From positions 79,386 through 143,385 of the forward strand of contig NIVC01002260.1 in NCBI GenBank assembly GCA_002269645.1: a DNA stretch of 64,000 nt. Reading direction: 5' to 3'. The notes under the pieces were generated by a model, which ran no database searches, was not told the DNA's origin, and was given only the letters and a program-made list of their open reading frames with translations. Below, in pieces: positions 30,977 through 56,400 of the stretch (positions are counted from its first letter, which is position 1; each line of letters starts with the position of its first letter). This stretch comes from Macrostomum lignano (lineage: Eukaryota). Made by a program: the position numbers and the translations under genes.

Positions 30977-31106
30977 CACCTGTGCATCGATAACGGAGGA
31001 GTCAGGGGCAGCCCGGACCCGCATTGTCTATAAATGATGCCGCTCCGAGACCCTCGGTAACAGTCAATTTGGAAGAAATCTGAAGCACCGGATACGCCAG
31101 GTAAGT
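30977..31106 (+). promoter_or_regulatory. Core promoter and non-coding first exon of gene A
   Basis: E-box-containing cacctgtgcatc 30977-30988, TATAAA 31029-31034, Inr-like cagtc about 31061, donor GTAAGT at 31101, acceptor at 31243 upstream of ATG 31251. Confidence 0.6.
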
Positions 31107-31250: not shown

Positions 31251-34200
31251 ATGCGTCTGACGGTGCTGCTTCTGCTCTCCGTTGTGGTGCTTCTGGCTCT
31301 CACTAGCGATGTTAGCGACGCCCGAAGATCGAAGCCGTGAGTATAGACCGAATTAGCTTTGCCAGTTACACTACTTAAAGCAGGCTAGTGTCTCAACTTG
31401 CTTGGATCAAGTTTGCTCATGTCGGCTTTCGCGAATAAATTTTCAGTCGCTGGGCCAGACGATGTTTTCGAAAGCTCGGAAAGACGGTGAAGCGTCTGAA
31501 AAAGCTGGCGAAGATCAGGAAGATCCGCGCTAGGAGGGCCAAAAGGTCCTGGGCAAAGCGCATGGTCGCATGTGAGTGCAGTCCCTAATGTATCTGTGCA
31601 GTGCATTGTCTATGGAACAAACTGTAACAAGCGAATGATTCCCGGCTCGATGCTCGACTTTCAGCCATCAAAAAGTGCGGTCGGAGGCGCTGCGGGAGGC
31701 GGCAGCGATGCGTCGTTCGGCTATCCAGGAGGAAGATTGGCCGAATCTCCCGCCGAATCGCCCGGTTACGACGCCGCTACCGCAAGAAGAAGGCCAAGAT
31801 CAATCGAAAGTTTCGAGCTGCCATTCGCCGCAGCTTGAAACGAGTGAAAACGGCGGCCGGTCGCAAAGCGCTCTCCAGCAAAAAGTCCAAGGCCAGAAAG
31901 GTTGTCAACAAGAGGAAGAAAAAGCTTCGCAGGCGAACTAGAAAACGACTGGTATCCCTGAAGCGGAAATTGCGCCGGGCTCGACGAGGGTCGAAGAGGT
32001 GCGTGTCCAGGAGACGCCGCAGCTCGCGAAGGAGACGTGGTGAGTATTCACTTTGTCGGCTGTATGAAAATACGGTGCAGTCTATGTGGCCCAATTCATA
32101 AAAAACATCGCTTTTACTTCCGATCCTACAGGCGTGCGGTGCGGCCGAAGACGCTGCAGCATTCGTCAGCGATGCGTCGCCCGACGATCCAGAAGACGAA
32201 TCCGACGAATCCGCCGCCGAATCTCCAAGCTGGGACGATCGTATCGCAAGAAGCGGGCTAAAATTAGCCGCAAGTTGCGCGCCGCCATTCGCCGCAGCTC
32301 TCGACGCGTCAAATCGCTGGCCGCATGCCAAAGGCTCTCCAAGAAGCGATCCAAGATCAGAAGGGCAGCCAATAAGCGAGTAAAGAAAGTTCGCAGGCGT
32401 TTTAGAAAGCGACTGGTATCCTTGAGACGCCGACTGAGAAGAGCACGAAGAGGATCAAGACGTTGCGTGTCTCGAAGGAGAAGACGCGGTAAGCCATGGA
32501 ATCTTTTTCGAGTAATAGACTAAAGTCACACACAGACACACATATATATATTTGCTCCTAAAGGTGTTCAATGTGGCCGAAGACGCTGCGGAAGACGTCA
32601 GCGATGCATTTCCCGACGATCGAGCAGAAGAATCCGCCGAATCCGAAACCGAATCTCCAAGGTAAGACGATCCTATCGAAAGAGACAGGCCAAAATCAGC
32701 CGAAAATTCCGCGCCGCCATTCGCCGGTATTCGCGATCGGTAAAGTCAGCAGCAGCACGTCAAAAACAAGCCAAAAAGAGGGCTAAGGCCAGAAAAATTG
32801 TCCGCAAGCGAACTAGAAAGCTTCGAAATCAAACTAAAAGAAGACTGCGATCTCTGAAGCGCAAATTGAGTAGAGCTCGGCGACAATCAAGAAGGTGCGT
32901 TTCACGAAGACTAATTAGATCCAGAAAAAGACGCTCCTTGAAACGCCGTGCCAACCAAAGAAGACGCTCAGCGAGAAGACGTGCCAACCGAAAGAGACGT
33001 GGCAGCAAGAGACGATCGAGGAGAAGCCGAAGACGTGCCAACCGAAAGAGACGTGGCAGCAAGAGACGATCGAGGAGAAGCCGAAGACGTGCCAACCGAA
33101 AGAGACGTGGCAGCAAGAGACGATCGAGGAGAAGCCGAAGACGCGCCAACCGAAAGAGACGTGGCAGCAAGAGACGATCTAGAAGAAGCCGAAGACGTGC
33201 GAACCGAAAGAGACGTGGCAGCAAGAGACGATCTAGGAGAAGCCGAAGACGTGCCACCCGAAGAAGTCGAAGAGCGAGAAGACGCGCCAACCGAAAGAGA
33301 CGTGGCAGCAAGAGACGATCGAGGAGAAGCCGAAGACGTGCCACCCGAAGAAGTCGAAGAGCGAGAAGACGCGCCAACCGAAAGAGACGTGGCAGCAAGA
33401 GACGATCTAGGAGAAGCCGAAGACGTGCCACCCGAAGAAGTCGAAGAGCGAGAAGACGCGCCAACCGAAAGAGACGTGGCAGCAAGAGACGATCTAGGAG
33501 AAGCCGAAGACGTGCCACCCGAAGAAGTCGAAGAGCGAGAAGACGCGCCAACCGAAAGAGACGTGGCAGCAAGAGACGATCGAGGAGAAGCCGAAGACGT
33601 GCCACCCGAAGAAGTCGAAGAGCGAGAAGACGCGCCAACCGAAAGAGACGTGGCAGCAAGAGGCGACCTAGAAGAAGAAGACGTGCGACCCGAAGAAGTC
33701 GAAGAGCGAGAAGACGCGCCAACCGAAAGAGACGTGGCAGTAGGAGACGATCTAGAAGAAGCAGAAAACGTGCCACTCGAAGAAGTCGAAGAGCGAGAAG
33801 ACGCGCCAACCGAAAGAGACGTGGCAGCAAGAGACGATTAAGGAGAAGCCGAAGACGTGCCAACCGAAAGAGACGTGGCAGCAAGAGACGATCTAGGAGA
33901 AGCCGAAGACGTGCCACCCGAAGAAGTCGAAGAGCGAGAAGACGCGCCAACCGAAAGAGACGTGGCAGCAAGAGACGATCGAGGAGAAGCCGAAGACGTG
34001 CCACCCGAAGAAGTCGAAGAGCGAGAAGACGCGCCAACCGAAAGAGACGTGGCAGCAAGAGGCGACCTAGAAGAAGAAGACGTGCGACCCGAAGAAGTCG
34101 AAGAGCGAGAAGACGCGCCAACCGAAAGAGACGTGGCAGCAAGAGACGATCTAGGAGAAGCCGAAGACGTGCCACCCGAAGAAGTCGAAGAGCGAGAAGA

Positions 34201-37200
34201 CGCGCCAACCGAAAGAGACGTGGCAGCAAGAGACGACCTAGAAGAAGAAGACGTGCGACCCGAAGAAGTCAAAGAGCGAGAAGACGCGCCAACCGAAAGA
34301 GACGTGGCAGCAAGAGACGATCGAGGAGAAGCCGAAGACGTGCCACCCGAAGAAGTCGAAGAGCGAGAAGACGCGCCAACCGAAAGAGACGTGGCACCAA
34401 GAGACGATCGAGGAGAAGCCGAAGACGTGCCACCCGAAGAAGTCGAAGAGCGAGAAGACGCGCCAACCGAAAGAGACGTGGCAGCAAGAGACGATCTAGG
34501 AGAAGCCGAAGACGTGCCACCCGAAGAAGTCGAAGAGCGAGAAGACGCGCCAACCGAAAGAGACGTGGCAGCAAGAGACGATCGAGGAGAAGCCGAAGAC
34601 GTGCCACCCGAAGAAGTCGAAGAGCGAGAAGACGCGCCAACCGAAAGAGACGTGGCAGCAAGAGGCGACCTAGAAGAAGAAGACGTGCGACCCGAAGAAG
34701 TCGAAGAGCGAGAAGACGCGCCAACCGAAAGAGACGTGGCAGTAGGAGACGATCTAGAAGAAGCAGAAAACGTGCCACTCGAAGAAGTCGAAGAGCGAGA
34801 AGACGCGCCAACCGAAAGACACGTGGCAGCAAGAGACGATTAAGGAGAAGCCGAAGACGTGCCAACCGAAAGAGACGTGGCAGCAAGAGACGATCTAGGA
34901 GAAGCCGAAGACGTGCCACCCGAAGAAGTCGAAGAGCGAGAAGACGCGCCAACCGAAAGAGACGTGGCAGCAAGAGACGATCGAGGAGAAGCCGAAGACG
35001 TGCCACCCGAAGAAGTCGAAGAGCGAGAAGACGCGCCAACCGAAAGAGACGTGGCAGCAAGAGGCGACCTAGAAGAAGAAGACGTGCGACCCGAAGAAGT
35101 CGAAGAGCGAGAAGACGTGCCAACCGAAAGAGACGTGGCAGCAAGAGACGATCGAGGAGAAGCCGAAGACGTGCCAACCGAAAGAGACGTGGCAGCAAGA
35201 GACGATCGAGGAGAAGCCGAAGACGTGCCAACCGAAAGAGACGTGGCAGCAAGAGACGATCGAGGAGAAGCCGAAGACGCGCCAACCGAAAGAGACGTGG
35301 CAGCAAGAGACGATCTAGAAGAAGCCGAAGACGTGCGAACCGAAAGAGACGTGGCAGCAAGAGACGATCTAGGAGAAGCCGAAGACGTGCCACCCGAAGA
35401 AGTCGAAGAGCGAGAAGACGCGCCAACCGAAAGAGACGTGGCAGCAAGAGACGATCGAGGAGAAGCCGAAGACGTGCCACCCGAAGAAGTCGAAGAGCGA
35501 GAAGACGCGCCAACCGAAAGAGACGTGGCAGCAAGAGGCGACCTAGAAGAAGAAGACGTGCGACCCGAAGAAGTCGAAGAGCGAGAAGACGCGCCAACCG
35601 AAAGAGACGTGGCAGTAGGAGACGATCTAGAAGAAGCAGAAAACGTGCCACTCGAAGAAGTCGAAGAGCGAGAAGACGCGCCAACCGAAAGACACGTGGC
35701 AGCAAGAGACGATTAAGGAGAAGCCGAAGACGTGCCAACCGAAAGAGACGTGGCAGCAAGAGACGATCTAGGAGAAGCCGAAGACGTGCCACCCGAAGAA
35801 GTCGAAGAGCGAGAAGACGCGCCAACCGAAAGAGACGTGGCAGCAAGAGACGATCGAGGAGAAGCCGAAGACGTGCCACCCGAAGAAGTCGAAGAGCGAG
35901 AAGACGCGCCAACCGAAAGAGACGTGGCAGCAAGAGGCGACCTAGAAGAAGAAGACGTGCGACCCGAAGAAGTCGAAGAGCGAGAAGACGCGCCAACCGA
36001 AAGAGACGTGGCACCAAGAGACGATCGAGGAGAAGCCGAAGACGTGCCACCCGAAGAAGTCGAAGAGCGAGAAGACGCGCCAACCGAAAGAGACGTGGCA
36101 CCAAGAGACGATCGAGGAGAAGCCGAAGACGTGCCACCCGAAGAAGTCGAAGAGCGAGAAGACGCGCCAACCGAAAGAGACGTGGCAGCAAGAGACGATC
36201 TAGGAGAAGCCGAAGACGTGCCACCCGAAGAAGTCGAAGAGCGAGAAGACGCGCCAACCGAAAGAGACGTGGCAGCAAGAGACGATCGAGGAGAAGCCGA
36301 AGACGTGCCACCCGAAGAAGTCGAAGAGCGAGAAGACGCGCCAACCGAAAGAGACGTGGCAGTAGGAGACGATCTAGAAGAAGCAGAAAACGTGCCACTC
36401 GAAGAAGTCGAAGAGCGAGAAGACGCGCCAACCGAAAGAGACGTGGCAGCAAGAGACGATTAAGGAGAAGCCGAAGACGTGCCAACCGAAAGAGACGTGG
36501 CAGCAAGAGACGATCGAGGAGAAGCCGAAGACGTGCCACCCGAAGAAGTCGAAGAGCGAGAAGACGCGCCAACCGAAAGAGACGTGGCAGCAAGAGACGA
36601 TCTAGGAGAAGCCGAAGACGTGCCACCCGAAGAAGTCGAAGAGCGAGAAGACGCGCCAACCGAAAGAGACGTGGCAGCAAGAGACGATCGAGGAGAAGCC
36701 GAAGACGTGCCACCCGAAGAAGTCGAAGAGCGAGAAGACGCGCCAACCGAAAGAGACGTGGCAGCAAGAGGCGACCTAGAAGAAGAAGACGTGCGACCCG
36801 AAGAAGTCGAAGAGCGAGAAGACGCGCCAACCGAAAGAGACGTGGCAGTAGGAGACGATCTAGAAGAAGCAGAAAACGTGCCACTCGAAGAAGTCGAAGA
36901 GCGAGAAGACGCGCCAACCGAAAGAGACGTGGCAGCAAGAGACGATTAAGGAGAAGCCGAAGACGTGCCAACCGAAAGAGACGTGGCAGCAAGAGACGAT
37001 CTAGGAGAAGCCGAAGACGTGCCACCCGAAGAAGTCGAAGAGCGAGAAGACGCGCCAACCGAAAGAGACGTGGCAGCAAGAGACGATCGAGGAGAAGCCG
37101 AAGACGTGCCACCCGAAGAAGTCGAAGAGCGAGAAGACGCGCCAACCGAAAGAGACGTGGCAGCAAGAGACGATCTAGGAGAAGCCGAAGACGTGCCAAC

Positions 37201-40200
37201 CGAAAGAGACGTGGCAGCAAGAGACGATCGAGGAGAAGCCGAAGACGTGCCACCCGAAGAAGTCGAAGAGCGAGAAGACGCGCCAACCGAAAGAGACGTG
37301 GCAGCAAGAGGCGACCTAGAAGAAGAAGACGTGCGACCCGAAGAAGTCAAAGAGCGAGAAGACGCGCCAACCGAAAGAGACGTGGCAGCAAGAGACGATC
37401 GAGGAGAAGCCGAAGACGTGCCACCCGAAGAAGTCGAAGAGCGAGAAGACGCGCCAACCGAAAGAGACGTGGCAGCAAGAGGCGACCTAGAAGAAGAAGA
37501 CGTGCGACCCGAAGAAGTCGAAGAGCGAGAAGACGCGCCAACCGAAAGAGACGTGGCAGCAAGAGACGATCTAGGAGAAGCCGAAGACGTGCCAACCGAA
37601 AGAGACGTGGCAGCAAGAGACGATCTAGGAGAAGCCGAAGACGTGCCACCCGAAGAAGTCGAAGAGCGAGAAGACGCGCCAACCGAAAGAGACGTGGCAG
37701 CAAGAGACGATCTAGGAGAAGCCGAAGACGTGCCACCCGAAGAAGTCGAAGAGCGAGAAGACGCGCCAACCGAAAGAGACGTGGCAGCAAGAGACGATCG
37801 AGGAGAAGCCGAAGACGTGCCACCCGAAGAAGTCGAAGAGCGAGAAGACGCGCCAACCGAAAGAGACGTGGCAGCAAGAGGCGACCTAGAAGAAGAAGAC
37901 GTGCGACCCGAAGAAGTCGAAGAGCGAGAAGACGCGCCAACCGAAAGAGACGTGGCAGCAAGAGACGATCTAGGAGAAGCCGAAGACGTGCCACCCGAAG
38001 AAGTCGAAGAGCGAGAAGACGCGCCAACCGAAAGAGACGTGGCAGCAAGAGACGATTAAGGAGAAGCCGAAGACGTGCCAACCGAAAGAGACGTGGCAGC
38101 AAGAGACGATCTAGGAGAAGCCGAAGACGTGCCACCCGAAGAAGTCGAAGAGCGAGAAGACGCGCCAACCGAAAGAGAAGTGGCAGCAAGAGGCGACCTA
38201 GAAGAAGAAGACGTGCGACCCGAAGAAGTCAAAGAGCGAGAAGACGCGCCAACCGAAAGAGACGTGGCAGCAAGAGACGATCGAGGAGAAGCCGAAGACG
38301 TGCCACCCGAAGAAGTCGAAGAGCGAGAAGACGCGCCAACCGAAAGAGACGTGGCAGCAAGAGGCGACCTAGAAGAAAAAGACGTGCGACCCGAAGAAGT
38401 CGAAGAGCGAGAAGACGCGCCAACCGAAAGAGACGTGGCAGCAAGAGACGACCTAGAAGAAGAAGACGTGCGACCCGAAGAAGTCGAAGAGCGAGAAGAC
38501 GCGCCAACCGAAAGAGACGTGGCAGCAAGAGACGATCTAGGAGAAGCCGAAGACGTGCCAACCGAAAGAGACGTGGCAGCAAGAGACGATCGAGGAGAAG
38601 CCGAGGACGCGCCAACCGAAAGAGACGTGGCAGCAAGAGACGATCTAGGAGAAGCCGAAGACGTGCCACCCGAAGAAGTCGAAGAGCGAGAAGACGCGCC
38701 AACCGAAGAAGACGCTCAGCGAGAAGACGTGCCAACCGAAGAAGACGCTCAGCGAGACGTGCCAACAAAAGAAGACGCTCAATGAGAAGACGCGCCAATC
38801 GTAGAAAACCTGGCAGTAAGAGACGATCTAGAAAAAGCAGAAGACGTGCCAACCGACGAAGGCGTAGAGTGAGAAGACGTGCCAACCGAAGGAGACGTGG
38901 CGGTAAGAGACGATCTAGAAGAAGCAGAAGGCGCGCCAACAGAAGAAGACGCTGGTTGAGAAGACGTGCTGACAGAAGGCGAAAACGCATTTACAGACAT
39001 AAGAGACGGATTTCTAGGAGAAAAGGTAAATATTTAATTTGAATTCTGTTGTCTTTTACTTAGGAACTTATTGGTGATCCCGTAAAAAACTTTTGCAGCA
39101 CAAAGAAGGAAACGTAGATCCTTAACCAAATGTGGCAAATTCCGTTGCGGCCGAGGTACATCGTGCTTCCGTAGGTATCGCTATTCGTCTCGGGTTAGAG
39201 CAGCCGCCACCAGGGCTTTTAGAAGCCGATCAGCTAGCGCACTGAAGCAGTTCAAAGCCAAGAAGGCAAAGGCAAATGCAAAATTTAGTGCGTACTTGAG
39301 AAGGCGAGTTGCTTCCTACACAGGTAAGTTTCATTTACCTTTCATAAATTTATTTCCTTATTCAATATTTACTTTAATTGAAAAAATCTCAACACTCATG
39401 CTTCCAACATGGAAATCGACATGCAAATTAAATTAAAACAGTATTTGATTTTTAGGTAGAAGCAACAGACAGGCTTGTGAGCACTCTTCAATCTCTATCA
39501 GATGTCCCAAAGGATACAAAATTGACATTCTGTCCGGATTCTACGGCCGCACCAACAAGACTGTCTGCCGTAATAAGGCGATGAAGTCGACGCGCTGCTC
39601 AGCAGCATCGGCAACCCCGAGAGTGAAGAAGGCATGCCAGGGTAGGCGATCCTGCCGGGTCAGCAGCAGCAACTCCGTCTTTGGAGACCCCTGCGTTGGT
39701 ACATACAAGTATCTGAAGATTTCCTACAGGTGCAAGACGTACAAACCCACCCGAAAGTTGCTGAAGGAGCGAGCTGTCAGACGGCGCCGTCACCTTGCAG
39801 TTCTGGCCCGTTTGGCTAAGCGATATGCTCAGCGACAGGCCCGAATCAAGAGAGCGTTCATCAGATACCATTCAACAGTTGGTCGATGCGCTTTCGCCAG
39901 AGCCAGTTCAGGTATCTCTCTTCATTTTAAATTAAAACCAATTTTTTCCGATTAGAGTTGCTGGACTTGATGCATCAGTGATTTTCACCACATGAATATT
40001 TCAGCCATCTGCAAACGAATCAGCTGCGGAAGAAGACGCCGCTGTGTGCTAAGAAGAAAGCGCTTTATCGGCAAGGTGGCTTATCGCCCAGCCTGCGTCC
40101 GAAGACCGCGCCGTAAGTGATTGAATCATTTAGTATGTACTGCTTATAAAGTACAGCAGAACTCACTTTAGTCCGTCCCCATGCAACTCAACACCAGGAC

Positions 40201-43200
40201 GGTGCGGCAAGGCGGTTTGCAAGCGAGGCCAGCGATGCGTCATTCGCACAGTCAAGCGTCGAGTTGGTTCCGTCTTTAGAAGTGTGCGAATTGCCAGCTG
40301 TAGAAAAATTAAGTGTAAGTGCGAGCTAGTCTTAAAATATTTTAACAGGTAGTCGTAATATCTGTTGTTGTATGAATTTTTTCTGGTGTTCTTTGTAACA
40401 TTTTTTTTAAATTCGCATAACATGTTATCCATGATCATACACATTTGTTAATAATATTCCCACCTATTGCAGCTCCATGCGAAGTCGTTCGCTGTAGCCG
40501 CAGCAGGCGCTGTGTAGCTCGATTCCGCTTCTCCAAGTCCATCAGACTGAGGGCTTCCAGGCGGTACGGTCGCCTAGTTGCCAAGGCTAGGGCCAACTAC
40601 AATAAGCGCAAGGCTGCGTCCATCAAGCGCATCAACTCCTACCTGCGCAATTTTGCCAGAAAAACGCCGAGATACAAAAGTAAGTGAATATTTTGTACAG
40701 CAGACATCTTTTTGATTTTATGTATACTTGCCATTCTTCAATACTAGTCCATATTTCTGTGCCTGTCTTTACTTTAACTTCTGTACGAGTATCTTGATGC
40801 CTAGCAGCATTGCAAGAAAGTTAATATTTCGCCTGATACCAGATGCCAGCCCGAAACTTTCCTGTGAGCACGGATCGTCGAGCCTCAGCTGTACATCTGG
40901 CTCCACCATCGATGTGCTTTCCGCATTCTACGGCCGCACCTCCGGCAGCGTGTGCAAGAGAGGCCCCATCAAAACTACCAAATGCCGGTCGGGCAGCGCC
41001 AACAGTGCGGTCAGGCGCATTTGCCAGGGCAAATCCTCTTGCTCAGTTCGGGCCAGCAACTCCGTATTCGGCGATCCTTGCGTTGGAACATTCAAGTACA
41101 TGCGAATCAACTACCGATGCAAGTCCACCACCCCGACTGCAGCTGAAAGGAGAAAGAGACAAAAGAGGATCCAAAAGCACAGAAGCTACCTGGCGAAGCT
41201 GGGCAGCATGTACAGGCGTACCAGAGCATATCTGCAGCGCAAGCTGAAGCGAGCTACCGGCCTGAAAGCTCGATGTGTCAGGCGTAGACGAAGTGAGACG
41301 CTCTTTAAGCTAGAAATTTTAGCATACCGGATTTCTTTTATCACAAGCAAAACCGACACCTTCCACTCGCACAGGTGTTTGCCACAAACGACGATGCCGC
41401 AGAGGACGCGTCTGTGTTGCTCGCAGAGTTTCTCGCCGACGAGTTGTTGCCCGTTGCGTGAGGCCCCGGGGTACGTTTTGTATCATATTGTGTATCATTC
41501 AAGTTATAAAAAGAAATCAGGAAAATAGCTTTCAATTAACTCTGCTCATTCCAGCTCTATGCTCAAGAAAACGATGCGCGAGAGGCTCCCGCTGCGTTGT
41601 TCGTCGCACCATCTCAAAGGCTTTACGCAAATTCCGCTCGGTTAGGCGCAAGATGTACCGCCACTATCGTGCCAGAAGAAGCGCCCTGAAAGCTAGCTAC
41701 AGAAGAAGCAGGCGCAATGCCCGAGCGGCTTTCAAGCTGGCTGCCAAGGCCAGCAGGAAAGCAATTGCTAGAGCAATTAGGGCAAAGAATGCCAAGAAAG
41801 CAAAGAGCCTGAAGAAGGCGTGGAGCCGTCGCAGAGGTTTGCTAAAAGCAAGACTTCGCAGGCAGAGAAGAAAATACAAGAAAGCTAGTCACCGCCTCAG
41901 ACTGAGCTTCAGAAAGAGCTCTTCGCGTCTGTCTCGTCGTTACAAAAAGCTCAGATTTGTCAAGTATTCGGCTAGGTGTACCGTCAATCGATGCTACCGA
42001 GTCAGGTGCAAGTCAGGCTTCTCCTGCAGAAATGTTAGGCGATTCTCTAAGAAATTTGCTGCTTACATCCAGCAGAGACGCGTCTTGTCGAAGTCCTACC
42101 GCGCAGTCCGCCGAAGACTGCTCCGATCGCTGTATGCCAAGGCCCGCAAGGCCACAAAGCTTTTCCGAAAGCATCTGGCCAGACACCGCTCCGGCATTAG
42201 ACGCGCGAAGACCGCATCCGCTAGAAGATCACTTAGATCGGCTCTACGACGCAAGGTGAGACGTCTCCGACGTGCTAGACGTGCTGCTCATCTGAAGTAC
42301 CGACGTGCCGTGAAGCTTGCTAGAAGAAACTACCAGCTGAGGCGCAAGGCGCTGCGTAGAAAGCATGCAAATAAATCGGCTTTCAAGAACCGAGTCAGGA
42401 CTGTAGCTCGTTGCATCCGCAGAGTGAGAAGTAAGCTGCTTTGTTGACTGAAAATCATACATTTTTAAACAAGAGCAGTAACAGACCTCTCATTCGCAAT
42501 TTCTGACTTTGCTTTCAGGATCTTGCAAGAATGTCAAGTGTTCAGCCGGCAAGCGTTGCGTCTCGACTGTTGTTTCTCGCAGATGGTTCAGGCGGTACAG
42601 GCGAAGTCTGAAGAGAGGCAACAGACGAAAACGCTCTCGTCTAGTGCGGTCTATTCGGAAGCTTCGTTATCTCCGCAGGCAGTACAGAAGACGTTTGAAC
42701 CGTCGTAGGAGGCGTGCCATCAAATCATTTAGACGCTGGTTTGGACGCGCCGTTAGGCGTCTTGGCGGAAAGAGGCGTTACAGAAGGAGGGCTGGAAGAC
42801 GCAGTCGCAAATCCGGGTCCCGTTCTGCTCGACGAAACAGAGGAGCTGGATCGTTCCTCTGGGGCAGGTACAGACGTGCCGCTCGCCGGTACCGAAGAAA
42901 GTTTAGGAAGACCATTCGAAGGGTTTCTAAGCGCAGACTGAAGAAATACGCTAAATCGAAGAAGCGTGCCCGAAAGTCAGTTTTCAGAAGGTTCAAAAGA
43001 AATGCGCGAAAGTTTGCACGTCGCGTTCGTTTCCTGAAGAGACGAGTCGCGAAGCAGTTCCGACAGCTAAAGTCGGCCTACAAGAGAGGTAAGAAAGCAA
43101 CAGCTGCCGACTGGAAGAAGCTGAAGAAGAAGATCTTGAGAAGATACAAAAAGATCAAAAAAGCCTACAGAAAGATGTTGAAGCGAGCAGTTGTTTCCTA

Positions 43201-45136
43201 CTACAAACGGAGGGTTAATGTCGTGAGATCATTGAAGAAACGGCTAAGAAAGTTCAAGCGGAGACCAAGAAGCTTCAGAAGACGCTACACACGCCGAGCC
43301 ATCTGCGTTGCAGTAAATCCATGCCGGAGAAAGCGTTGTAGTCGAGGGTTTATCTGCCGGGTGCGAAAGATCAAAGCAAAAAGTGGCCGAACCAGATCTG
43401 TCGCTCGATGCGAGAAGAAAGCCAGTAAGTACTCGTACTTTTTAATAACTTTAAATTTTCTGTCAAAAGTCATGGATTTTTTGCAACTTTCTCAGTCTAT
43501 ATACAGACCTACAAAGAGTAAAGCATCAAATTTCAGACAAGTGCAGCAAGGTGAACTGTTCCAAGGGCAAGCGATGCATCGTCAGGCGGGTGTCGACTCG
43601 TACTTTCAAAGGTTTCCGCTGGTTTGCCAGGGCAAACCGTAGACGCTTCAGGCGCAAGGCTCGACGACTTTTCAAACGTCTCCGCAACAAGAGGCGAAGA
43701 TTCGCGAGGCGAGTCGTAAAGAAGTACAAAAAGGTGCGCAAGTCTCTCAGGAAGCGTCTCCGCGGTCGGAAGCTCGCTAGGCGTGTCAAAGCCGTAAAAC
43801 GCTCTGTGAGGCGAAAACTGCGAAGATTCCGAAACCGATCGCGGAGGTCTTTCCGTCGACGGAGAGCCGCGCTGAAACGGCGATTTAGAAGCGCTGTGAG
43901 GCGTTTCTCCGCACGATACTTGAGCTACCGGAGGCGCTACAAGACCCGTGCAATTTGTGTCAAGAGGCTAAAAAGTGAGTTGAAAGCATTATATTTGATT
44001 AGATAGGATTTTTATTTTAATGTTTGCTGAAATTGCAGCAAGTATATCTAGATACGATATGTAATACGATCGATGATACACATGATAAAGTGCTTCCAAA
44101 TAAACGACATGTTTGTTGTAAATATTTCAGTAATATTTTTATTACTATTGTATTCATTTCAGACCCTTGCAGCAAGAAACGCTGTCGAAAAGGCACAAGG
44201 TGCGTTGTTAGAAGAAAGCAGTCCAGGCTTCAGAAGAAATTCATCAGAATCGCAAAACGCCAAATCAAGAAGTTCGTATCAGTCCGGCGTCGGTTGAGTA
44301 AGCTGCGTCGTCGCAAGCGCAAAGTCGCCGTTCGCAAACTGACTCGCAAACTCAAACGGAAGCTGAGAAAGCTGCACAGACTATACAGAAGACGCGGCGC
44401 TTTCCAACGAAGCCGAAAGCTCGTGGCTCGCTGCTCAAGCGTGAGGAGAAGAACCCGTCGCATTTCCTGGAGAAGGAGAGTCTATCGCTTTTCAAGGAGG
44501 GTTCGTCGACGCGTCTCAAAGAGAGCCCGCCGTGTATCTCGGAATGTTCGACGTTTTTGGGGTAAATCTCGTCGCTTTTCTAGGAGAGTTCGTCGACGCG
44601 TCTCAGGGAGAGTTCGTCGACGCGTCTCAGGGAGAGTTCGTCGTGCCTCAAAGAAAGTCCGTCGCTTCTGGGGTAAAGCTCGTCGCTTTTCAAGGAGAGT
44701 TCGTCGACGCGTCTCAAGGAGAGCTCGCCGTGTATCTCGGAAGGTTCGACGTTTTTGGGGTAAATCTCGTCGCTTTTCAAGGAGAGTTCGTCGACGCGTC
44801 TCAGGGAGAGTTCGTCGTGCCTCAAAGAAAGTCCGTCGCTTCTGGGGTAAATCTCGTCGCTTTTCAAGGAGACTTCGTCGACGCGTCTCAAGGAGAGCTC
44901 GCCGTGTATCTCGGAAGGTTCGACGTTTTTGGGGTAAATCTCGTCGCTTTTCAAGGAGACTTCGTCGACGCGTCTCAAGGAGAGTTCGTCGCCGCGTCTC
45001 AAGGAGAGTTCGTCGACGCGTCTCAAGGAGAGTTCGTCGACGCGTCTCAAGGAGAGTTCGTCGCCGCGTCTCAAGGAGAGTTCGTCGGCGCGTCTCAAGA
45101 AGGTCAAGAAAGAGCGGCAGATCCAGGAGGCGATGA
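31251..45136 (+). CDS. Gene A: giant secreted Arg/Lys-rich protein (about 4085 aa) with 14 FOLN-like cysteine modules, 2 SUEL/rhamnose-binding lectin domains and a long protamine-like repeat
   Basis: Signal peptide MRLTVLLLLSVVVLLALTSDVSDA. Exons 31251-31336, 31447-31571, 31665-32039, 32132-32488, 32564-39025, 39099-39323, 39456-39911, 40005-40112, 40198-40314, 40473-40679, 40843-41292, 41375-41470, 41555-42430, 42519-43424, 43537-43974, 44163-45136 join GT-AG in frame (12258 nt); AATAAA at 45217. Confidence 0.85.
32950..38800 (+). repeat. Coding tandem repeat in gene A (54, 84 and 87 bp units encoding RRRANRKRRGSKRRSRRS with or without RRRATRRSRRA)
   Basis: Stop-free Arg frame across the array; all unit variants are multiples of 3. 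Confidence 0.95.
39473..39733 (+). other. SUEL/Gal_lectin (rhamnose-binding lectin) domain 1 of gene A
   Basis: ACEHSSISIRC...FYGR...C...C...CQGRRSCRV...NSVFGDPCVGTYKYLKISYRC matches family motifs (ACE, YGR, FGDPC, KYL). Confidence 0.92.
40860..41120 (+). other. SUEL/Gal_lectin domain 2 of gene A
   Basis: SCEHGSSSLSC...AFYGR...CQGKSSCSV...NSVFGDPCVGTFKYMRINYRC. Confidence 0.92.
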
Positions 45137-47094
45137 TCAGCTTCCTCGTTGATAGACTAAGTGTGGTGATAGAATTTCCTCTCTCCCTCAAATGACGAGG
45201 ATTATGGGCTTTGGAAAATAAATATGGCTATTTAATTATCAAAACATCTTGCCACGCAAAAACAACTCAAATCAGCAAGAATGAATTGTCACCCGATGTT
45301 TTGCTTCCAAAACCACAGTTCGATGGGTAGAATGATCAAATAACGGAGGTATTAACTGGAGTTAATTCAATTGGGCCAAGAATATGAGCTAACTTATGCG
45401 ACTGAGAGAGCGCGCATCAATAAAATTTGCACAAAACTATGGTTAAAGATTGGTGACAGTTTCAACAAGCCTCCAACTTTTGAATTTAGCTTTGTTCCAC
45501 CGACACCGACTACTGATGAGCATATCAAGAGCATATCTTCTAAAAAACTATTCAATTACTTCTAATTAACATAATAGCCGTTTGATTTGTTGAATTCGCC
45601 TCTTTCGCATCTCTAGTTCGATTGCATTTTAAGCCTCGTGATGAGTATATGGGCAATGTAGTCAGGCATTGCTGCCAGTGCCTGCTGCAATGGCAGCTGT
45701 AAAGAGCGGAAAACAGACAGGCTGGTACAGGATAATACAGAATATTTCAGACGTGAACTTGCTCCAACTTTATGCACGTGTCATATTGCGCAGGTGAAGT
45801 CTAGCTAAGATGCAGTTATTGGGCTTTTTGGTATATTAGTCCTCAACTCAGCGCTTCCAAGGCCTTAACGACATGCTCTCGAGCTGCTGTGCCTTTTTGC
45901 GTCTTCGATGACTGAAAGTTCAAAACCACAGCTTCAATGAAGCTCCCCCTCAAGGAAGATCTCCAATCACCATCTCCAATGAAGACCCTGAAGGTAACAG
46001 GGGCCTCCGGAGCAGCTTGAGTCAGCTGGGTCATCGATGGCTGAATGCAAATGCAAAGGAGCATCTCAGTTGTGGAAACATAGAGAGGCGTATACGAATT
46101 CAATAACGAAGTTTAAACCCGATTGAAAAGTTCTATGGTTTGGTTTCGATCAGTTGCCTCACACCTGACGACTCAATTTTTCTTCGAAAAAATTTACCTA
46201 ACTTAAAAATTTGCTGACCGTCGCAGAATTTTCTCCCAGCGACCCTGCCGGGAGCCTGAGGGCTCCCTCCCTGCTCAGCACGCGACTCTGCTCCGCATGA
46301 AGCCGCCCCGAGCCGAGAGCAGCGCGGCTGACGGCCCTTGGCCAGTTGGCGCCCCAATCAACAACCTCCCCAAATCGAAGCCATGGGATCCATTTTTCCC
46401 TTTCTCGCTCCTCGCTTTGGCGAAAAAACTTTTTTTCACCACAGCCGTCTTCCAGTCTTCACCTTCTGCTGCTCACGGGGGCGAACAGCAACTGTTCAGC
46501 ATCGATTTTTGAGCAGCGTCAACAGCCTCGAGGAACCTTCCTGCCCGAGTGCCCCGGCCGCAGCTGCAGCTCCTGTCGGGAATTTTTTGCAGGGAAAAAG
46601 CTGAATTTTTGAAACGCTCAGCGAATTATTTTTGCTAGGATCTTTTTCAATCTTTTTCTGTCCCCGTATAGCCAGGAGAAACTGAAAGCGGAGATGAGCT
46701 TTGTCAAAGCTCTGACTTTCATTTGACTTGACTCAAAGTTCACACAAGCTTTAGTTAAATTGCTATTTCAGTATTTTAAACAAGCAAGCATAGCCTTGTT
46801 AAACAAGCGATAGTCTGGACAGTGACAACTAGAGGGACGCTTCACTGAATCTCGCCTTGATGCTTGGCTTTTTGGTCCTTCCTCCTTCCTTATAAATATT
46901 TTTATAACATAAGCGAAAGGGCTGTGTCACAAAGAAAAGCAAATAAAAAGTTTTCTTATTATTTAAGCAGTTTTATGTTTTTAGTTTCCCGCGTGTTATC
47001 AGTGAGAACTGACATCTTCTCACAGTCAGAACATTCGAATTTTAAATTTATCCTCCAAGGTTGATTCAAATTTTTGTCAAGCCAATGCTACCAA

Positions 47095-53424: not shown

Positions 53425-56400
53425 ATGCGTCTCACAGTGCTGTTTCTTCTTTCTGTTTGTCTTTTTCTTGCGCTAACCAGCGACGTTGGAGAGTCCTGGG
53501 GGTGAGTTTGAGTCATATTTTTGTCTTCGAATCATTCCTGCCCTTATTTTTAACAGCAGGCTTTTTCAATTAGCGTTGAAGGTGCTGAACAATCCTAACG
53601 CCTTTTTTCCACTCGCTTTCAGATGCGGATGGGCGTGCAAACGCATGCGTCGCATCCGAGCGAGAGCCGCCAGGCTGAGGCGGCTGGCGATTCAGAGGGC
53701 CAGGGCCCTCAGGCGCCGCATCTTGCTGGCTCGGCGGAGAGCAGCCAGAGCTGCGGCAAGAGCGCGGGCCAGAGCCAGAGCTTGGGCTCGAGCCAGGGCC
53801 AGAGCTGCTGCTAGAGCCAGGGCCAGAGCCAGGGCCATTGCTAGAGCCAGGGCTAGAGCTTTAGCCAAACGGTTGGCAAGAGCCCGCGCAAGAGCTCGCG
53901 CAATTGCAAGAGCCAGAGCTAGAGCTTTGGCCAGACGTGTGGCAAGAGCACGCGCAAGAGCTCGCGCAATCGCTAGAGCCAAGGCTAAAGCTTTGGCCAG
54001 GCGTGTGGCAAGAGCACGCGCAAGAGCTCGCGCCAAGGCAAGGGCTTTGGCCAGAGCAGCGGCTAGAGCAGCGGCCAGAGCAAGGGCCAGAGCTAAAGCT
54101 CGTGCCCGGGCCATCGCCAGGCGGTTGGCAAAAGCACGAGCCAGAGCTAGAGCAATCGCTAGAGCCAGGGCTAGAGCTTTGGCCAGACGTTTGGCAAGAG
54201 CTCGCGCAAGAGCTCGCGCAATCGCCAAAGCCAGGGCTAGGGCTTTGGCCAAGGCAGCGGCGAGAGCAAGGGCCAGAGCCAGAGCTCGTGCCCGGGCCGT
54301 CGCCAGAGCCTTGGCACGTGCTAAAGCTAGAGCCCGGGCTAAGGCAAGAGCTGTGGCTAGAGCATTGGCTAGAGCAAGAGCCAGAACGAGAGCACTGGCC
54401 CGAGCAAAAGCCAGAGCCCTGGCCAGGGCAGTGGCCAGAGCCAAAGCTAGAGCAAGAGCCAGAGCTAAAGCATTGGCCAGAGCCAAAGCCCTAATTCGTG
54501 CCCGAGCCCGATCTTTGGCGGCGGCGGCGGCGAGAGTAAAAGCAAGAGCCACAGCCCGAGCGAGAGCCTGGGCCAGGAGACGAGCTCTAGCCCTGAAGCG
54601 AGCCAAAGCCACAGCGAGACGAAGAGCCAGAGCTCTGGCCAGGGCCGTCGCTAAAGCAAGTAGAAGAGCAAAAGCTTTAGCTAGAGCCAAGGCTAGAAGA
54701 GTGGCCAGAGCGGCGGCAAGAGCGGCGAAGAAGATTCGAGACTGGTTCCGAAGGCGGGCCAAGCGCGGAAGAATCATCAAGAGATCAATCTACCGTCGTG
54801 TGAAGCGGCTCAAAACCCGTTTTGTCAAGTTCGTCAAGCGTCTGTTCCGCAAATGCCCACGAGGATACAAGAAGCGTGGAAATCGTTGCTACCGCCTTTA
54901 CTGCCCGAAGCCGTACGTCCGCCGAGGCGCCCGGTGCGTTCGCTACTACCGAATCTACAAGCCCCGAAAATGGTGCCCCAAAGGTTTCCGTCGAAGAGGC
55001 AGCCGGTGCATCAAGCGCATGCGCATCATCTGCGCAGCTGGCTATCGAGTTTACCGCGGCAGATGTCACCTGGTCCGGTGCCGTCGTGGATTCATCAAGA
55101 TCGGTAGAAGCTGCCGCCGCAGCTGCAAGCCCGGATTCCGACTCCGTGGCCGTTTTTGCGTTCGCTATCGCTTCCGATGCCCCAAGAACTTTTATTACCA
55201 TCGAAGGCGCTGCGTCCGATTCCGCCGAGGATCGACAAGGTAATTTTTGAAACTGCGAGTAGCATAGCATTTGAAATTGTTGCAATGCAAACCTAAGATG
55301 CGCGTGCAATTTTTTACTGTAGATGCCCGAGAGGATACCGCAGGAGAGGCAGAAAGTGCTTGCGCACCGTTCGATCGTGCCCGCTTAACTACCGCCGCCG
55401 AGGCAGGCGGTGTGTCAAGCGCTGTGCAAGCGGCCGGGTGCCTCGGCGCATTCGCCGCGGAGTGATCAGGTGCGTTGTCGTCACGTCCAAGTGCCCACTC
55501 GGTTACAGTCTGCGACGCGTGCGACGCGGAAGGCGCTACAGGTACTTTCCTTTAGTAGCAAATGTGAATACAAGATACTTTAAGAACAAAATAAATACTA
55601 AGTATTACATCTGCTTCAGGTTCCGCTGCGTCATCAATGCTGGAAGATGTGCACGTGGATTCAGACGAGTCAAGCGATACAGACGTGGCTTTTCTTGCGT
55701 TCGCATTGTCTGCCCGAGACACTACAGGAAACGCGGATCTCGATGCGTCTACCGACCACCCAAGGGTGGCAGCCGAAGATGTCCGGCAGGTTACAAAAAG
55801 GTGCGAGGCGTCTGCAAGAAGCTGAACTGCCCGGCCGGCTACGTGCGCAGGGGATCGCGCTGTGTGCACACCAGGTGCCCCCGTTTCTACCGCCGAGTGG
55901 GCAGATTCTGTGCCCGGATACGCTTTGTTGGCAAATGCCCAAGAGGCTGGCGCAGGACTGGCCGTCTCTGCCGCAGACGTGTGTGCCCGAGCGGCTTCAA
56001 GAAAGTTGGTCGCTACTGCATGCGTAAGTCCTTAACATAAATTGCAGTTCTCACTAAAGATGCAGTCACTTGAGCACTGGGTAATGCAGATAACCCACAA
56101 CGCTTTAGCGATTTGAATCAAATAGAAATAGAATTGCGGCTTGCGATTTGCGGATATTTTATCCGACCGAACCAATTTTTCAATAAATATTTACAGGAAA
56201 ATCCTGTCCATCTGGATTTGTCCGACGTGGTCGGGCTTGCTACAGAGGTGAGTTGATCCAAGCTCCTAATTGATGAATGATTCTCAGTTTTTCGAGTAAA
56301 GCGCGCAGCGACAGTTATTAAATATTGTTTTAATATTAAAATTTTAGCCCGATGCGCTCGCGGCTTCAAAAAGATGGGAAGCGTGTGCATCAGTGAGTGA

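What the first reader, a model, noticed from the sequence alone, without database searches (positions are those of the whole stretch)
32950..38800. 6.46 kb exon encoding about 1950 aa of protamine-like repeat in a secreted protein
Seen: an uninterrupted array of 18/28/29-aa units, more than half Arg, made almost only of R, S, K, A, N, G and T. Diagnostic variants recur (KRRLRRS near 33838, 34840, 35713, 36460, 36946, 38056), showing higher-order duplications. Each unit has an RKRR furin-type site and RRxS motifs. Inference: either an intact polycation of more than +1000 charge for coacervation, or a polyprotein cut into about a hundred cationic (possibly antimicrobial) peptides; storage would need a counter-ion or phosphorylation.
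Basis: partly seen in the sequence, partly recalled or inferred. Interest (0 to 1): 0.75.

Follow-up and report, generated by a model that had tools for sequence, protein, structure and literature searches.

The report
Giant arginine-rich secreted flatworm protein
The repeat is real: one 6.46 kb exon of a gene of the flatworm Macrostomum lignano encodes about 2,000 residues that are 58% arginine, inside a 4,085-residue secreted lectin-bearing protein whose other parts were already detected by mass spectrometry in the worm's adhesive footprints, which makes it an unstudied relative of the known polycationic flatworm glue proteins rather than a peptide precursor.

Summary
Observation confirmed. 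Exon 32564-39025 (6,462 nt, phase 1-1, AG/GT) is open only in the Arg frame. It is built from an 18-aa unit (ANRKRRGSKRRSRRSRRR), a 17-aa Pro variant and an 11-aa unit (ATRRSRRARRR), in higher-order blocks marked by six KRRLRRS units. The window is Macrostomum lignano. The exon is exon 5 of 16 in a gene (ATG 31251, stop 45136) encoding a signal peptide, 14 small Cys-clasped basic helical-hairpin modules and two SUEL lectin domains: 4,085 aa, net +2211. A tandem paralogue starts at 53425. All five peptides of an unnamed 1,639-aa, pI 12.5 entry in the footprint proteome of Wunderer et al. 2019 map to this gene. That entry's length and mass fit a transcript contig that starts inside the 3' end of the array exon. 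Furin-type and RRxS motifs are no commoner than composition predicts, and there are no spacers or amidation signals, so the polyprotein reading is unsupported. Best reading: an intact extracellular polycation, analogous to the KR regions of Mlig-ap1 and to Tmed-ap3. The gland of origin and translation of the array itself remain unproven.

The parts
31029..31100 (+). TATAAAT box (31029-31035) and a short non-coding first exon that ends at CCAG|gtaagt (31100)
   Evidence: Read directly from the sequence. The paralogous gene 2 has the same layout, and both share an upstream CCGCT..CACCTGTG.ATC motif. The transcription start is inferred, not shown.
31251..31336 (+). Coding exon 1: ATG and signal peptide MRLTVLLLLSVVVLLALTSDVSDA|RRSKP
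   Evidence: It is the only hydrophobic stretch of 16 or more residues in the protein. No SignalP run was available.
31447..31571 (+). Coding exon 2, a basic linker
   Evidence: AG/GT splice sites and reading frame continuity
31665..32039 (+). Exon 3 = basic module 1: CGRRRCGRRQRCV, about 95 aa of basic helices, then RCVSRR
   Evidence: A model of the paralogous module 2 has pLDDT 89.
32132..32488 (+). Exon 4 = basic module 2
   Evidence: The model shows a beta clasp plus a two-helix hairpin (H20-55, H62-106).
32564..39025 (+). Exon 5 (6,462 nt, phase 1-1): module 3 (32564 to about 32943), then the Arg-rich array (about 32944-39025; homogeneous core about 32983-38700; degenerate 11-aa units at both ends)
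33805..38076 (+). Six KRRLRRS marker units (54 nt each, starting at 33805, 34807, 35680, 36427, 36913 and 38023) that delimit higher-order blocks of 1002, 873, 747, 486 and 1110 nt
   Evidence: Exact long duplicates confirm the blocks.
39099..39323 (+). Exon 6, a basic module (CGKFRCGRGTSC...)
39456..39911 (+). Exon 7: SUEL lectin domain 1 plus a basic tail. It holds the published peptides IDILSGFYGR and VSSSNSVFGDPCVGTYK.
   Evidence: Pfam PF02140, E = 2e-23; peptide mapping
40005..40679 (+). Exons 8-10 (40005-40112, 40198-40314, 40473-40679): three short 4-Cys basic mini-modules
40843..41292 (+). Exon 11: SUEL lectin domain 2. It holds the peptides CTSGSTIDV[I/L]SAFYGR and ASNSVFGDPCVGTFK.
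   Evidence: Pfam E = 2.1e-22
41375..43974 (+). Exons 12-15 (41375-41470, 41555-42430, 42519-43424, 43537-43974): further Cys-clasped basic modules. They hold the peptide GAGSFLWGR (42842).
44163..45136 (+). Terminal exon 16, with a second in-frame basic repeat (RRVSRRVRRRVS / RKVRRFWGKSRRFS) and the stop TGA at 45134-45136
45217..45222 (+). AATAAA polyadenylation signal
   Evidence: Read from the sequence
53425..64000 (+). Tandem paralogue (gene 2): the same signal-peptide exon (MRLTVLFLLSVCLFLALTS...), an (AR)n Ala/Arg repeat exon, VWA_4 domains, and repeated basic-module + SUEL units. It runs off the window.

Best explanation
The array is a translated part of a secreted, hyperbasic, lectin-bearing protein of the free-living flatworm Macrostomum lignano. 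SHOWN: the gene has 16 coding exons. They encode a signal peptide, 14 copies of a small CxxxxCxxxxxC...C clasp that mostly holds a long basic helical hairpin, two SUEL (galactoside/rhamnose-binding) lectin domains, and no other known domain. The array is a roughly 2,030-residue expansion of the basic tail that follows the last Cys-strand of module 3. The predicted product has 4,085 aa, 513 kDa, 54% R+K, 0.3% D+E and net charge +2211. Peptides from the non-array parts were detected by mass spectrometry in published M. lignano footprint samples. INFERRED: the protein is exported intact. Outside the cell it acts as a giant polycation that binds polyanionic partners electrostatically; candidates are sulfated or carboxylated glycans of mucus, the glycocalyx, the substrate film, or the worm's unidentified negatively charged releasing substance. 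The SUEL domains would add specific binding to galactosyl glycans. This would be a cohesive or matrix role in the secreted adhesive or mucus material, reversible by competing polyanions, as proposed for the KR regions of Mlig-ap1 and for Tmed-ap3. The Pro- and Gly-Ser-containing units probably break the array into segments. Those segments may become helical only when their charge is neutralised.
For: Organism: a UniRef M. lignano protein shares identical stretches with the window. Gene model: every junction is AG/GT, every exon from exon 3 to exon 15 is phase 1-1, and the 12,258-nt CDS has no stop. Coding constraint on the array: only 1 of 6 frames is open. All unit-length variants differ by 3 nt and all long self-matches have offsets that are multiples of 3. 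Codon differences from the unit consensus are 57 synonymous against 28 non-synonymous in the 18-mer and 26 against 14 in the 11-mer, and most replacements keep the charge. About 880 CGA and AGA codons lie one step from TGA, yet no stop has arisen. Array edges are degenerate and the centre is homogenised, as in a genuine evolving array. Protein evidence: 5 of 5 peptides of the 1,639-aa, 199.74-kDa, pI 12.48 'Galactose binding lectin' entry of Dataset S2 (footprints) of PMC6410801 map to exons 7, 11 and 14. 8 of 9 peptides of the 3,863-aa entry map to the neighbouring paralogue. The MS database consists of whole-transcript frame translations. The reported 1,639 aa / 199.74 kDa is reproduced to 0.004 kDa only if the 4,920-nt contig begins 64 nt inside the 3' end of exon 5 spliced to exon 6. 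Skipping exon 5 gives a difference of 0.076 kDa and intron retention gives 0.61 kDa. Precedent: Mlig-ap1 carries more than 3,600 aa of KR-rich regions, detected in footprints by antibodies to the repeats. Heparin blocks attachment and polycations block release. Tmed-ap3 is a 3,700-aa secreted protein that is 88% G/R/K/H/S. Family context: a paralogue (A0A1I8I5M9) joins the same modules and a SUEL domain to VWD, TIL, VWA, EGF_CA and fn2 domains, an adhesive or mucin-type architecture.
Against: No peptide from the array itself has been seen. None can be expected: tryptic fragments are at most 4 aa. The footprint dataset also contains tubulin, actin and ribosomal proteins, so presence there does not prove secretion onto the substrate. 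The peptides are shared by 3-4 database entries, so they could come from a homeologous copy rather than this locus. The authors report that double knock-down of Mlig-ap1 and Mlig-ap2 removes the adhesive vesicles completely. That argues this protein is not a major adhesive-vesicle component and may come from another gland. The tissue of expression is unknown. Exon 5 is symmetric, so skipping it would keep the frame. The transcript inference rests on matching two published numbers. Array length cannot be verified without reads.
Confidence: 0.55

Rival explanations
1. Storage role. The polycation works mainly inside the secretory vesicle. It would be a condensing counter-ion that packs an acidic cargo (acid mucopolysaccharide of mucus or rhabdite-type glands, or the negatively charged releasing substance), as protamine packs DNA. 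It would be shed with the cargo at exocytosis.
For: A +2211 protein needs a counter-ion during storage. The releasing vesicles hold PAS-positive polysaccharide, and the releasing factor is proposed to be negatively charged. The protein is probably not a major part of the adhesive vesicle, because the ap1+ap2 double knock-down removes those vesicles. From my own knowledge, not tested here: rhabdites are classically acidophilic, meaning rich in basic protein.
Against: Releasing vesicles were reported to have a low protein density. The lectin domains and Cys-clasped modules suggest binding functions beyond charge neutralisation. No localisation data exist. This rival overlaps with the best explanation rather than excluding it.
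Confidence: 0.2
2. Polyprotein. Convertases cut the array into about a hundred short cationic (antimicrobial) peptides.
For: RKRR occurs once per 18/17-aa unit, 71 times in all. Arginine-rich peptides such as protamines can be antimicrobial (my own knowledge).
Against: R-x-[KR]-R is rarer than expected from composition (342 against 449 +/- 12). Basic pairs are everywhere (861 of them), so cleavage plus carboxypeptidase trimming would leave only AN, GS, S, AT and A fragments. There are no spacers, and only one G-[KR]-[KR] amidation-type site against 34 expected. The same basic density runs through the structured modules, whose peptides survive into the footprint sample. The KR repeats of Mlig-ap1 survive secretion in this animal.
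Confidence: 0.07
3. Not what it seems. The array is skipped or only partly included in the mature mRNA, or its length is an assembly artefact of a much shorter (or longer) repeat.
For: Exon 5 is phase 1-1, so skipping it keeps the frame. Exact 653-nt duplicates make mis-assembly possible. Short-read transcriptomes cannot span it; the published contig breaks at its edge. The window is full of non-coding minisatellites.
Against: Unlike most minisatellites in the window (periods 11, 19, 20, 23, 29, 32, 35, 44), every period here is a multiple of 3 and the frame is continuous with unique coding sequence on both sides. The published contig's length and mass fit a start inside the 3' end of exon 5. 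An independent older assembly's gene model (A0A1I8FTR7) also runs from module 3 into the array. Other exons of this gene and its paralogue carry smaller in-frame basic repeats.
Confidence: 0.12
4. A sperm nuclear basic protein: a true protamine or protamine-like protein.
For: Composition only: 58% Arg with Ser/Ala/Lys.
Against: It has an N-terminal signal peptide, extracellular SUEL lectin domains and disulfide-type Cys modules, and it is 513 kDa. Peptides were found in footprint samples.
Confidence: 0.02

Closest known systems
[quoted passage not shown] 2019, PMC6410801)
   Same: Same animal. Secreted. Thousands of residues of repetitive, extremely basic low-complexity sequence. Combined with carbohydrate-binding and protein-binding domains. 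Detected in footprints. Proposed to work by charge, with polyanions as antagonists.
   Different: Mlig-ap1 is described as Lys/Arg/Gly-rich ('GRK'), with repeat peptides such as SRKPRRKNRKSRKP and KSRKVN, none of which occurs in this window. Its core has a C-type lectin, vWD-C8-TIL and 17 EGF domains, whereas this gene has only SUEL domains and novel Cys-clasped helical modules. Here Arg alone is 58% and Gly 4%. Expression and function are untested.
Adhesion protein 3 of other flatworms (Tmed-ap3 of Theama mediterranea, Mile-ap3a/b of Minona ileanae; PMC9229212, PMC6745481)
   Same: A stand-alone giant secreted polycation: Tmed-ap3 has 3,700 aa, a signal peptide and 88% G/R/K/H/S. Assembly is only possible with long reads.
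   Different: Those are Lys-dominated GRK(HS) repeats with no lectin domains reported. No sequence similarity was detectable: array and module searches hit only M. lignano proteins.
Sea star footprint protein 1 (Sfp1) and similar multi-domain cohesive proteins
   Same: Galactose-binding (SUEL-type) lectin domains combined, in the paralogue A0A1I8I5M9, with vWD, TIL, VWA and EGF_CA domains. Footprint localisation.
   Different: To my knowledge Sfp1 has no polycationic low-complexity arrays. The gene holding the array lacks vWD and EGF.
Protamines and protamine-like sperm nuclear basic proteins
   Same: Arg content above 50% with Ser/Ala/Lys. Likely disordered until bound to a polyanion.
   Different: Protamines are small, nuclear, lack a signal peptide and bind DNA. 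This protein is about 100 times longer, secreted and carries lectin domains.
Polybasic cement proteins of the sandcastle worm (Phragmatopoma Pc-1, -2, -4, -5); complex-coacervate adhesives (my own knowledge, not checked here)
   Same: Secreted polycations thought to pair with polyanions in granules and set by charge interactions.
   Different: Those are small, Gly/Lys/His/Tyr-rich and DOPA-modified, and they pair with polyphosphoserine proteins. No such partner or modification is indicated here.

Membership tests
Flatworm polycationic (KR/GRK-rich) adhesion proteins (Mlig-ap1 KR regions, Mile-ap3, Tmed-ap3) | N-terminal signal peptide | tested here: met
   MRLTVLLLLSVVVLLALTSDVSDA at 31251 is the only long hydrophobic stretch. 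Judged by eye; SignalP was not available.
Flatworm polycationic (KR/GRK-rich) adhesion proteins (Mlig-ap1 KR regions, Mile-ap3, Tmed-ap3) | Very long repetitive low-complexity region dominated by Lys/Arg (with Gly, Ser, His) | tested here: met
   About 2,030 aa, 66% R+K and net +1331. The balance differs, however: R 58%, K 8%, G 4%.
Flatworm polycationic (KR/GRK-rich) adhesion proteins (Mlig-ap1 KR regions, Mile-ap3, Tmed-ap3) | Sequence relationship to Mlig-ap1 (repeat peptides; C-lectin/vWD/C8/TIL/EGF core) | tested here: not met
   SRKPRRKNRKSRKP, KSRKVN and CRKSRKVNEEAWPRSP are absent from all six frames. Pfam finds only SUEL_Lectin x2 in the gene.
Flatworm polycationic (KR/GRK-rich) adhesion proteins (Mlig-ap1 KR regions, Mile-ap3, Tmed-ap3) | Protein present in adhesive footprints | tested here: inconclusive
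   5 of 5 published footprint-sample peptides map to the gene. However, the sample also holds cytosolic proteins, and the peptides are shared with paralogous entries.
Flatworm polycationic (KR/GRK-rich) adhesion proteins (Mlig-ap1 KR regions, Mile-ap3, Tmed-ap3) | Expression restricted to adhesive gland cells; RNAi gives a non-adhesive or non-releasing phenotype | not testable with these tools
   No expression or knock-down data were found. Lengerer et al. 2018 is not held.
SUEL / rhamnose-binding lectin domain proteins (Pfam PF02140) | Domain match above Pfam's gathering score, with the conserved Cys framework and the YGR and DPC..KYL motifs | tested here: met
   Scores of 83 and 79.7 bits against a cut-off of 31.4; together 138.5 bits. 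The motifs ILSGFYGRT and VFGDPCVGTYKYL are visible in the translation. Sugar binding itself was not tested.
Protamines / sperm nuclear basic proteins | Small nuclear protein without a signal peptide, expressed in spermatids | tested here: not met
   A signal peptide and extracellular domains are present, and the protein has 4,085 aa. Expression was not testable.
Peptide polyprotein precursors (neuropeptide or antimicrobial type) | Defined peptide units separated by spacers and flanked by dibasic sites, often with Gly for amidation | tested here: not met
   No spacers. Basic pairs are ubiquitous (861). R-x-[KR]-R is below the composition expectation. G-[KR]-[KR] occurs once against 34 expected.

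The most novel reading that the evidence does not exclude
The protein is an overlooked functional component of the flatworm's attach-and-release system: an extracellular 'protamine for glycans'. It would either form a charge-driven condensate with sulfated or acidic glycans at the moment of secretion, or be the stored partner or target of the still unidentified negatively charged releasing factor. On this reading, expansion of the Arg array tunes how fast the worm sticks and lets go. With 58% Arg over about 2,000 residues, it would be among the most highly charged secreted polypeptides described.
Probability: 0.15. Interest if true: 0.75.

Novelty: new variant of a known kind. Interest (0 to 1): 0.5.

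Why it matters
Temporary adhesion in Macrostomum lignano is the best-worked molecular model of reversible underwater glue. [quoted passage not shown] This locus shows that the published footprint proteome also contains at least two further hyperbasic, lectin-bearing proteins from a lineage-restricted gene family. One of them carries an Arg-dominated array of about +1300 charge that short-read transcriptomes could not assemble. If it takes part in adhesion, release or mucus formation, it changes the parts list of that model. It would also offer a natural, genetically tractable polyarginine for studying charge-driven condensation with glycans. If it does not, it is still an extreme example of in-frame minisatellite expansion building a secreted polycation. 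It is also a caution that trypsin-based proteomics is blind to such domains.

Tried and rejected
1. Homologue searches. The N-terminal modules hit only one fragmentary M. lignano model. The SUEL-containing query was swamped by fish and echinoderm rhamnose-binding lectins and gave only one M. lignano fragment. A 334-aa stretch of the array gave no hit at E <= 0.001 among 8,000 candidates. An exhaustive phmmer search of exon 13 against 1.84 billion representatives gave only two M. lignano paralogues.

2. Identity with Mlig-ap1: rejected. Its repeat and antigen peptides are absent, and the domain content differs.

3. Tissue of expression. Searches of the supplements of Weber 2018 and Arbore 2015 for lectin, hemicentin or latrophilin annotations found nothing. 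No M. lignano cell atlas turned up. Lengerer 2018 is not held. A search for the histochemistry of rhabdites gave nothing usable.

4. The Cys mini-domain. There is no Pfam match even at E = 10. I had recalled a follistatin-N/EGF-like pattern, but it stays an untested resemblance. The module model has no significant PDB fold neighbour; the best E-value is 0.59, against generic helical hairpins.

5. Structure of the array. A single-sequence AlphaFold2 run on 145 aa of the array gives two long helices broken at the Pro unit (pLDDT 85.7, pTM 0.37). I do not take this as evidence of a stable fold for an uncompensated polycation, only of helical propensity.

6. ORF length as evidence of coding: discounted. 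The strand has only 5.5% T and the units are few, so I relied instead on frame continuity, 3-nt indels and the synonymous excess.

7. No tRNA genes were found in the window.

Full report
WHAT IS THERE

Tandem Repeats Finder reports one continuous array between about 32.95 and 38.95 kb, with periods of 54, 84 and 87 nt and higher-order periods of 171-399 nt. Translation in one + frame gives an uninterrupted Arg-rich sequence.

The array sits in an exon bounded by a canonical acceptor (ctcctaaag|GT, exon start 32564) and donor (AAG|gtaaat, exon end 39025).

The + strand has only 5.5% T. The five other frames carry 9-60 stops.

ANATOMY OF THE ARRAY

Cutting the protein at every A[NT][RK] gives 135 sub-units of two kinds:
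- an 18-aa unit, ANRKRRGSKRRSRRSRRR (61 copies including variants), with a 17-aa Pro variant, ANRKRRGSKRRPRRRRR (14 copies);
- an 11-aa unit, ATRRSRRARRR (58 copies).

Six KRRLRRS units start at 33805, 34807, 35680, 36427, 36913 and 38023. They split the array into blocks of 1002, 873, 747, 486 and 1110 nt whose unit order is related. Exact duplicates of up to 653 nt occur at offsets of 873 and 3108 nt, and all of the 200 best self-match offsets are multiples of three.

Both ends of the array are degenerate 11-aa units (ANQRRRSARRR ... ANRRRRSARRR, ANKRRRSMRRR), while the centre is homogenised. This is the usual picture of an array evolving by unequal exchange.

IS IT CODING?

ORF length alone is weak evidence, because the strand is T-poor and the units are few. 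Better evidence is the following.
- The frame is continuous with unique coding sequence on both sides, and the exon is phase 1-1 like its neighbours.
- Every length variant differs by 3 nt.
- Codon differences from the unit consensus are mostly synonymous: 57 against 28 in the 18-mer and 26 against 14 in the 11-mer. These counts are of copies, not independent events. Replacements mostly keep the charge: K/R, S/P/L, S/T.
- About 880 CGA and AGA codons are one step from TGA, and none has become a stop.
- By contrast, most other minisatellites in the window have periods that are not multiples of three: 11, 19, 20, 23, 29, 32, 35, 44.

THE GENE

The window is eukaryotic DNA with short GT-AG introns.

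A TATAAAT box lies at 31029. It is followed by a short non-coding exon and an intron. The start ATG is at 31251 and encodes MRLTVLLLLSVVVLLALTSDVSDA|RRSKP, a textbook signal peptide and the only long hydrophobic stretch in the protein.

I chained 16 coding exons by AG/GT sites and frame: 31251-31336, 31447-31571, 31665-32039, 32132-32488, 32564-39025, 39099-39323, 39456-39911, 40005-40112, 40198-40314, 40473-40679, 40843-41292, 41375-41470, 41555-42430, 42519-43424, 43537-43974 and 44163-45136.

The stop is TGA at 45134-45136 and an AATAAA signal lies at 45217. Exons 3 to 15 are all phase 1-1.

The product has 4,085 aa and 513 kDa: 44% R, 10% K, 0.3% D+E, net +2211. The array is therefore the extreme part of a protein that is hyperbasic throughout.

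Pfam finds only two SUEL lectin domains (exons 7 and 11; 83 and 80 bits, 138.5 bits together).

The rest is built from 14 copies of a CxxxxCxxxxxC motif, each followed at a variable distance by a fourth Cys. AlphaFold2 on module 2, using an alignment of three paralogous modules, gives pLDDT 89. The N-terminal Cys hairpin and the C-terminal RCVSRR strand form a small beta clasp, from which a two-helix, roughly 45-residue antiparallel basic hairpin projects. This fold has no Pfam match and no significant PDB neighbour.

The alignment of modules 1-3 shows where the array came from. After the conserved RCVSRR strand, modules 1 and 2 have 3-8 basic residues, whereas module 3 runs on for about 2,030 residues.

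A second, smaller in-frame basic repeat fills the last exon.

ORGANISM, FAMILY AND NEIGHBOUR

The N-terminal query hit a single protein, UniRef A0A1I8FTR7 of Macrostomum lignano. It shares identical stretches with the window, interrupted by frame errors.

An exhaustive search with exon 13 against 1.84 billion representative proteins found only two further M. lignano proteins:
- A0A1I8I5M9: 2,640 aa with SUEL, basic modules, VWD, TIL, VWA, five EGF_CA domains and fn2;
- A0A1I8GDF5, with its cluster mate A0A1I8JAD7: SUEL, VWA_4 and basic modules.

The family therefore looks lineage-restricted within what the databases hold.

In the window, a tandem paralogue starts at 53425 with a near-identical signal-peptide exon and a shared upstream CACCTG-containing motif. 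It encodes about 340 aa of (AR)n repeat, VWA_4 domains and at least four copies of a roughly 929-bp genomic unit, each holding a basic-module exon and a SUEL exon. It then runs off the window.

Upstream, at 5-25 kb, lies a PRP8 gene.

PUBLISHED PROTEIN EVIDENCE

Wunderer et al. 2019 (PMC6410801) analysed M. lignano footprints by mass spectrometry; this is their Dataset S2.

That table contains an unnamed entry annotated only as 'Galactose binding lectin domain, score 143.8': 1,639 aa, 199.74 kDa, pI 12.48. It has five peptides, and all five map to exons 7, 11 and 14 of this gene, allowing for I/L.

A second entry (3,863 aa, pI 12.13, annotated as lectin and hemicentin) has nine peptides, of which eight map to the neighbouring paralogue.

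I found no discussion of either entry in the main text.

Caveats. The dataset also lists tubulin, actin and ribosomal proteins. The peptides are shared by several database entries, and M. lignano carries duplicated genome copies. The stored parts of the pull-down and tail datasets did not contain these peptides, but those files are truncated.

IS THE ARRAY IN THE mRNA?

The entries in that MS database are frame translations of whole transcript contigs: the protein length equals the contig length divided by 3 throughout.

I slid a 4,920-nt window along my spliced model. The reported 1,639 aa / 199.74 kDa is reproduced to 0.004 kDa only when the contig starts 64 nt inside the 3' end of exon 5, is spliced to exon 6, and ends 3 nt after the stop. 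Skipping exon 5 gives at best a difference of 0.076 kDa, and retaining intron 5 gives 0.61 kDa.

This is indirect. It fits a short-read contig that breaks where the repeat begins, and it argues against the exon being skipped.

Translation of the array cannot be seen by standard proteomics, because its tryptic fragments are at most 4 aa.

- R-x-[KR]-R occurs 342 times against 449 +/- 12 in shuffles. RRxS occurs 77 times against 84.5 +/- 6.4. Both motifs are by-products of composition.
- There are no spacers. Basic pairs occur 861 times. G-[KR]-[KR] occurs once against 34 expected. S-x-[DE] sites number 0. N-x-[ST] sequons number 0 against 12.7 expected.
- Convertase cleavage followed by trimming would leave nothing but di- and tripeptides. 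RRxS is a motif of cytosolic kinases, which do not meet a luminal protein (established knowledge).
- The polyprotein reading therefore has no specific support.
- The intact-polycation reading has a precedent in the same worm. Mlig-ap1 carries more than 3,600 aa of KR-rich regions. Antibodies to its repeats stain footprints. Heparin and fondaparinux block attachment. Lysine, arginine, Mg2+ or a polybasic peptide block release.
- Other flatworms carry the polycation as a separate protein: Mile-ap3, and Tmed-ap3 with 3,700 aa that is 88% G/R/K/H/S.

MOST LIKELY MECHANISM

Shown: a secreted-type, hyperbasic, lectin-bearing gene product whose non-array parts are present in footprint samples.

Inferred: it is exported intact and acts as a giant polycation that binds polyanionic glycans or surfaces. 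The SUEL domains would add galactoside recognition. That gives a cohesive or matrix role in secreted adhesive or mucus material, reversible by competing polyanions.

A storage role, as counter-ion for an acidic cargo, is a close and partly overlapping rival.

Double knock-down of Mlig-ap1 and Mlig-ap2 abolishes the adhesive vesicles, so this protein may well come from another gland. I could not determine which one.

A single-sequence AlphaFold2 run on 145 aa of the array predicts long helices broken at the Pro unit (pLDDT 85.7, pTM 0.37). I read this only as helical propensity that might be realised once the charge is neutralised.

COMPARISON AND NOVELTY

The protein works like the KR/GRK-rich flatworm adhesion proteins, but it is not Mlig-ap1. 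The Mlig-ap1 repeat peptides are absent, the domain content differs, and the composition is Arg-dominated rather than Lys/Gly-rich.

It is a genuine SUEL-domain protein by Pfam criteria. It is not a protamine and not a peptide precursor.

I rate it a new variant of a known kind. It is an extreme, undescribed member of the class of secreted flatworm polycations, from a lineage-restricted family with a previously undescribed Cys-clasped helical-hairpin module.

Interest is moderate (0.5). A bioadhesion specialist would want to test it, and the tests are simple in this model animal. But giant secreted polycations are already known in the same species.

LIMITS

- There were no reads to verify the array length.
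- There is no direct transcript sequence.
- There are no expression data.
- The signal peptide was judged by eye.
- The exon chain is my own prediction.

Noticed in passing
window 44500-45136: The last exon of the same gene holds a second in-frame basic repeat (periods 24/87/174 nt) encoding RRVSRRVRRRVS and RKVRRFWGKSRRFS units up to the stop codon.
   Followed up: partly
window 53621-54700: Exon 2 of the tandem paralogue encodes about 340 aa of near-pure Ala/Arg repeat (ARARARAIARA...). This is a different kind of polycationic low-complexity array in the same gene family.
   Followed up: partly
window 60000-64000: At least four tandem genomic copies of a roughly 929-bp unit, over 90% identical. 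Each carries a basic-module exon and a SUEL-lectin exon of the paralogue. The published peptides CQLASSVVSSYAK and SNNAVFGDPCR each map four times here.
   Followed up: partly
window 30969-30990 and 53190-53212: The two paralogues share an upstream motif, CCGCT..CACCTGTG.ATC (containing an E-box-like CACCTG), roughly 40-70 nt before their TATA-like boxes. They also share near-identical signal-peptide exons. This is a possible common regulatory element.
   Followed up: no
window 31665-32488 and throughout genes 1 and 2: A recurring module: an N-terminal CxxxxCxxxxxC hairpin plus a C-terminal RC[VI] strand clasp a roughly 45-residue basic two-helix hairpin (AlphaFold2 pLDDT 89). It has no Pfam match and no PDB fold neighbour, so it is possibly an undescribed extracellular domain.
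   Followed up: partly
window 5000-25300: A PRP8 (pre-mRNA processing factor 8) gene on the + strand. Its introns are packed with long minisatellites of 11-44 nt periods and with CTA/TAC microsatellites.
   Followed up: no
window 26403-28476: A 1.7-kb 15-nt minisatellite (CCTGACCCACTCACC, GC skew -0.68) is open in two frames (PLTPD/PLTHN-type). It runs directly into a coiled-coil-like coding stretch that ends at a GT donor near 28476. It may be a coding repeat of another gene.
   Followed up: no
UniRef A0A1I8I5M9 (P0107), not in the window: This M. lignano paralogue combines the same basic modules and a SUEL domain with VWD, TIL, VWA, five EGF_CA domains and fn2. That architecture is close to sea star Sfp1 and to the core of Mlig-ap1, and it is probably the continuation of a gene like the window's gene 2.
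   Followed up: partly
window 32564-39025, array codons: The array contains no N-x-S/T sequon (0 against 12.7 expected) and almost no G-[KR]-[KR] (1 against 34 expected), despite 79 Asn and 75 Gly. This depletion is stronger than composition predicts, though it follows from the few unit types.
   Followed up: partly
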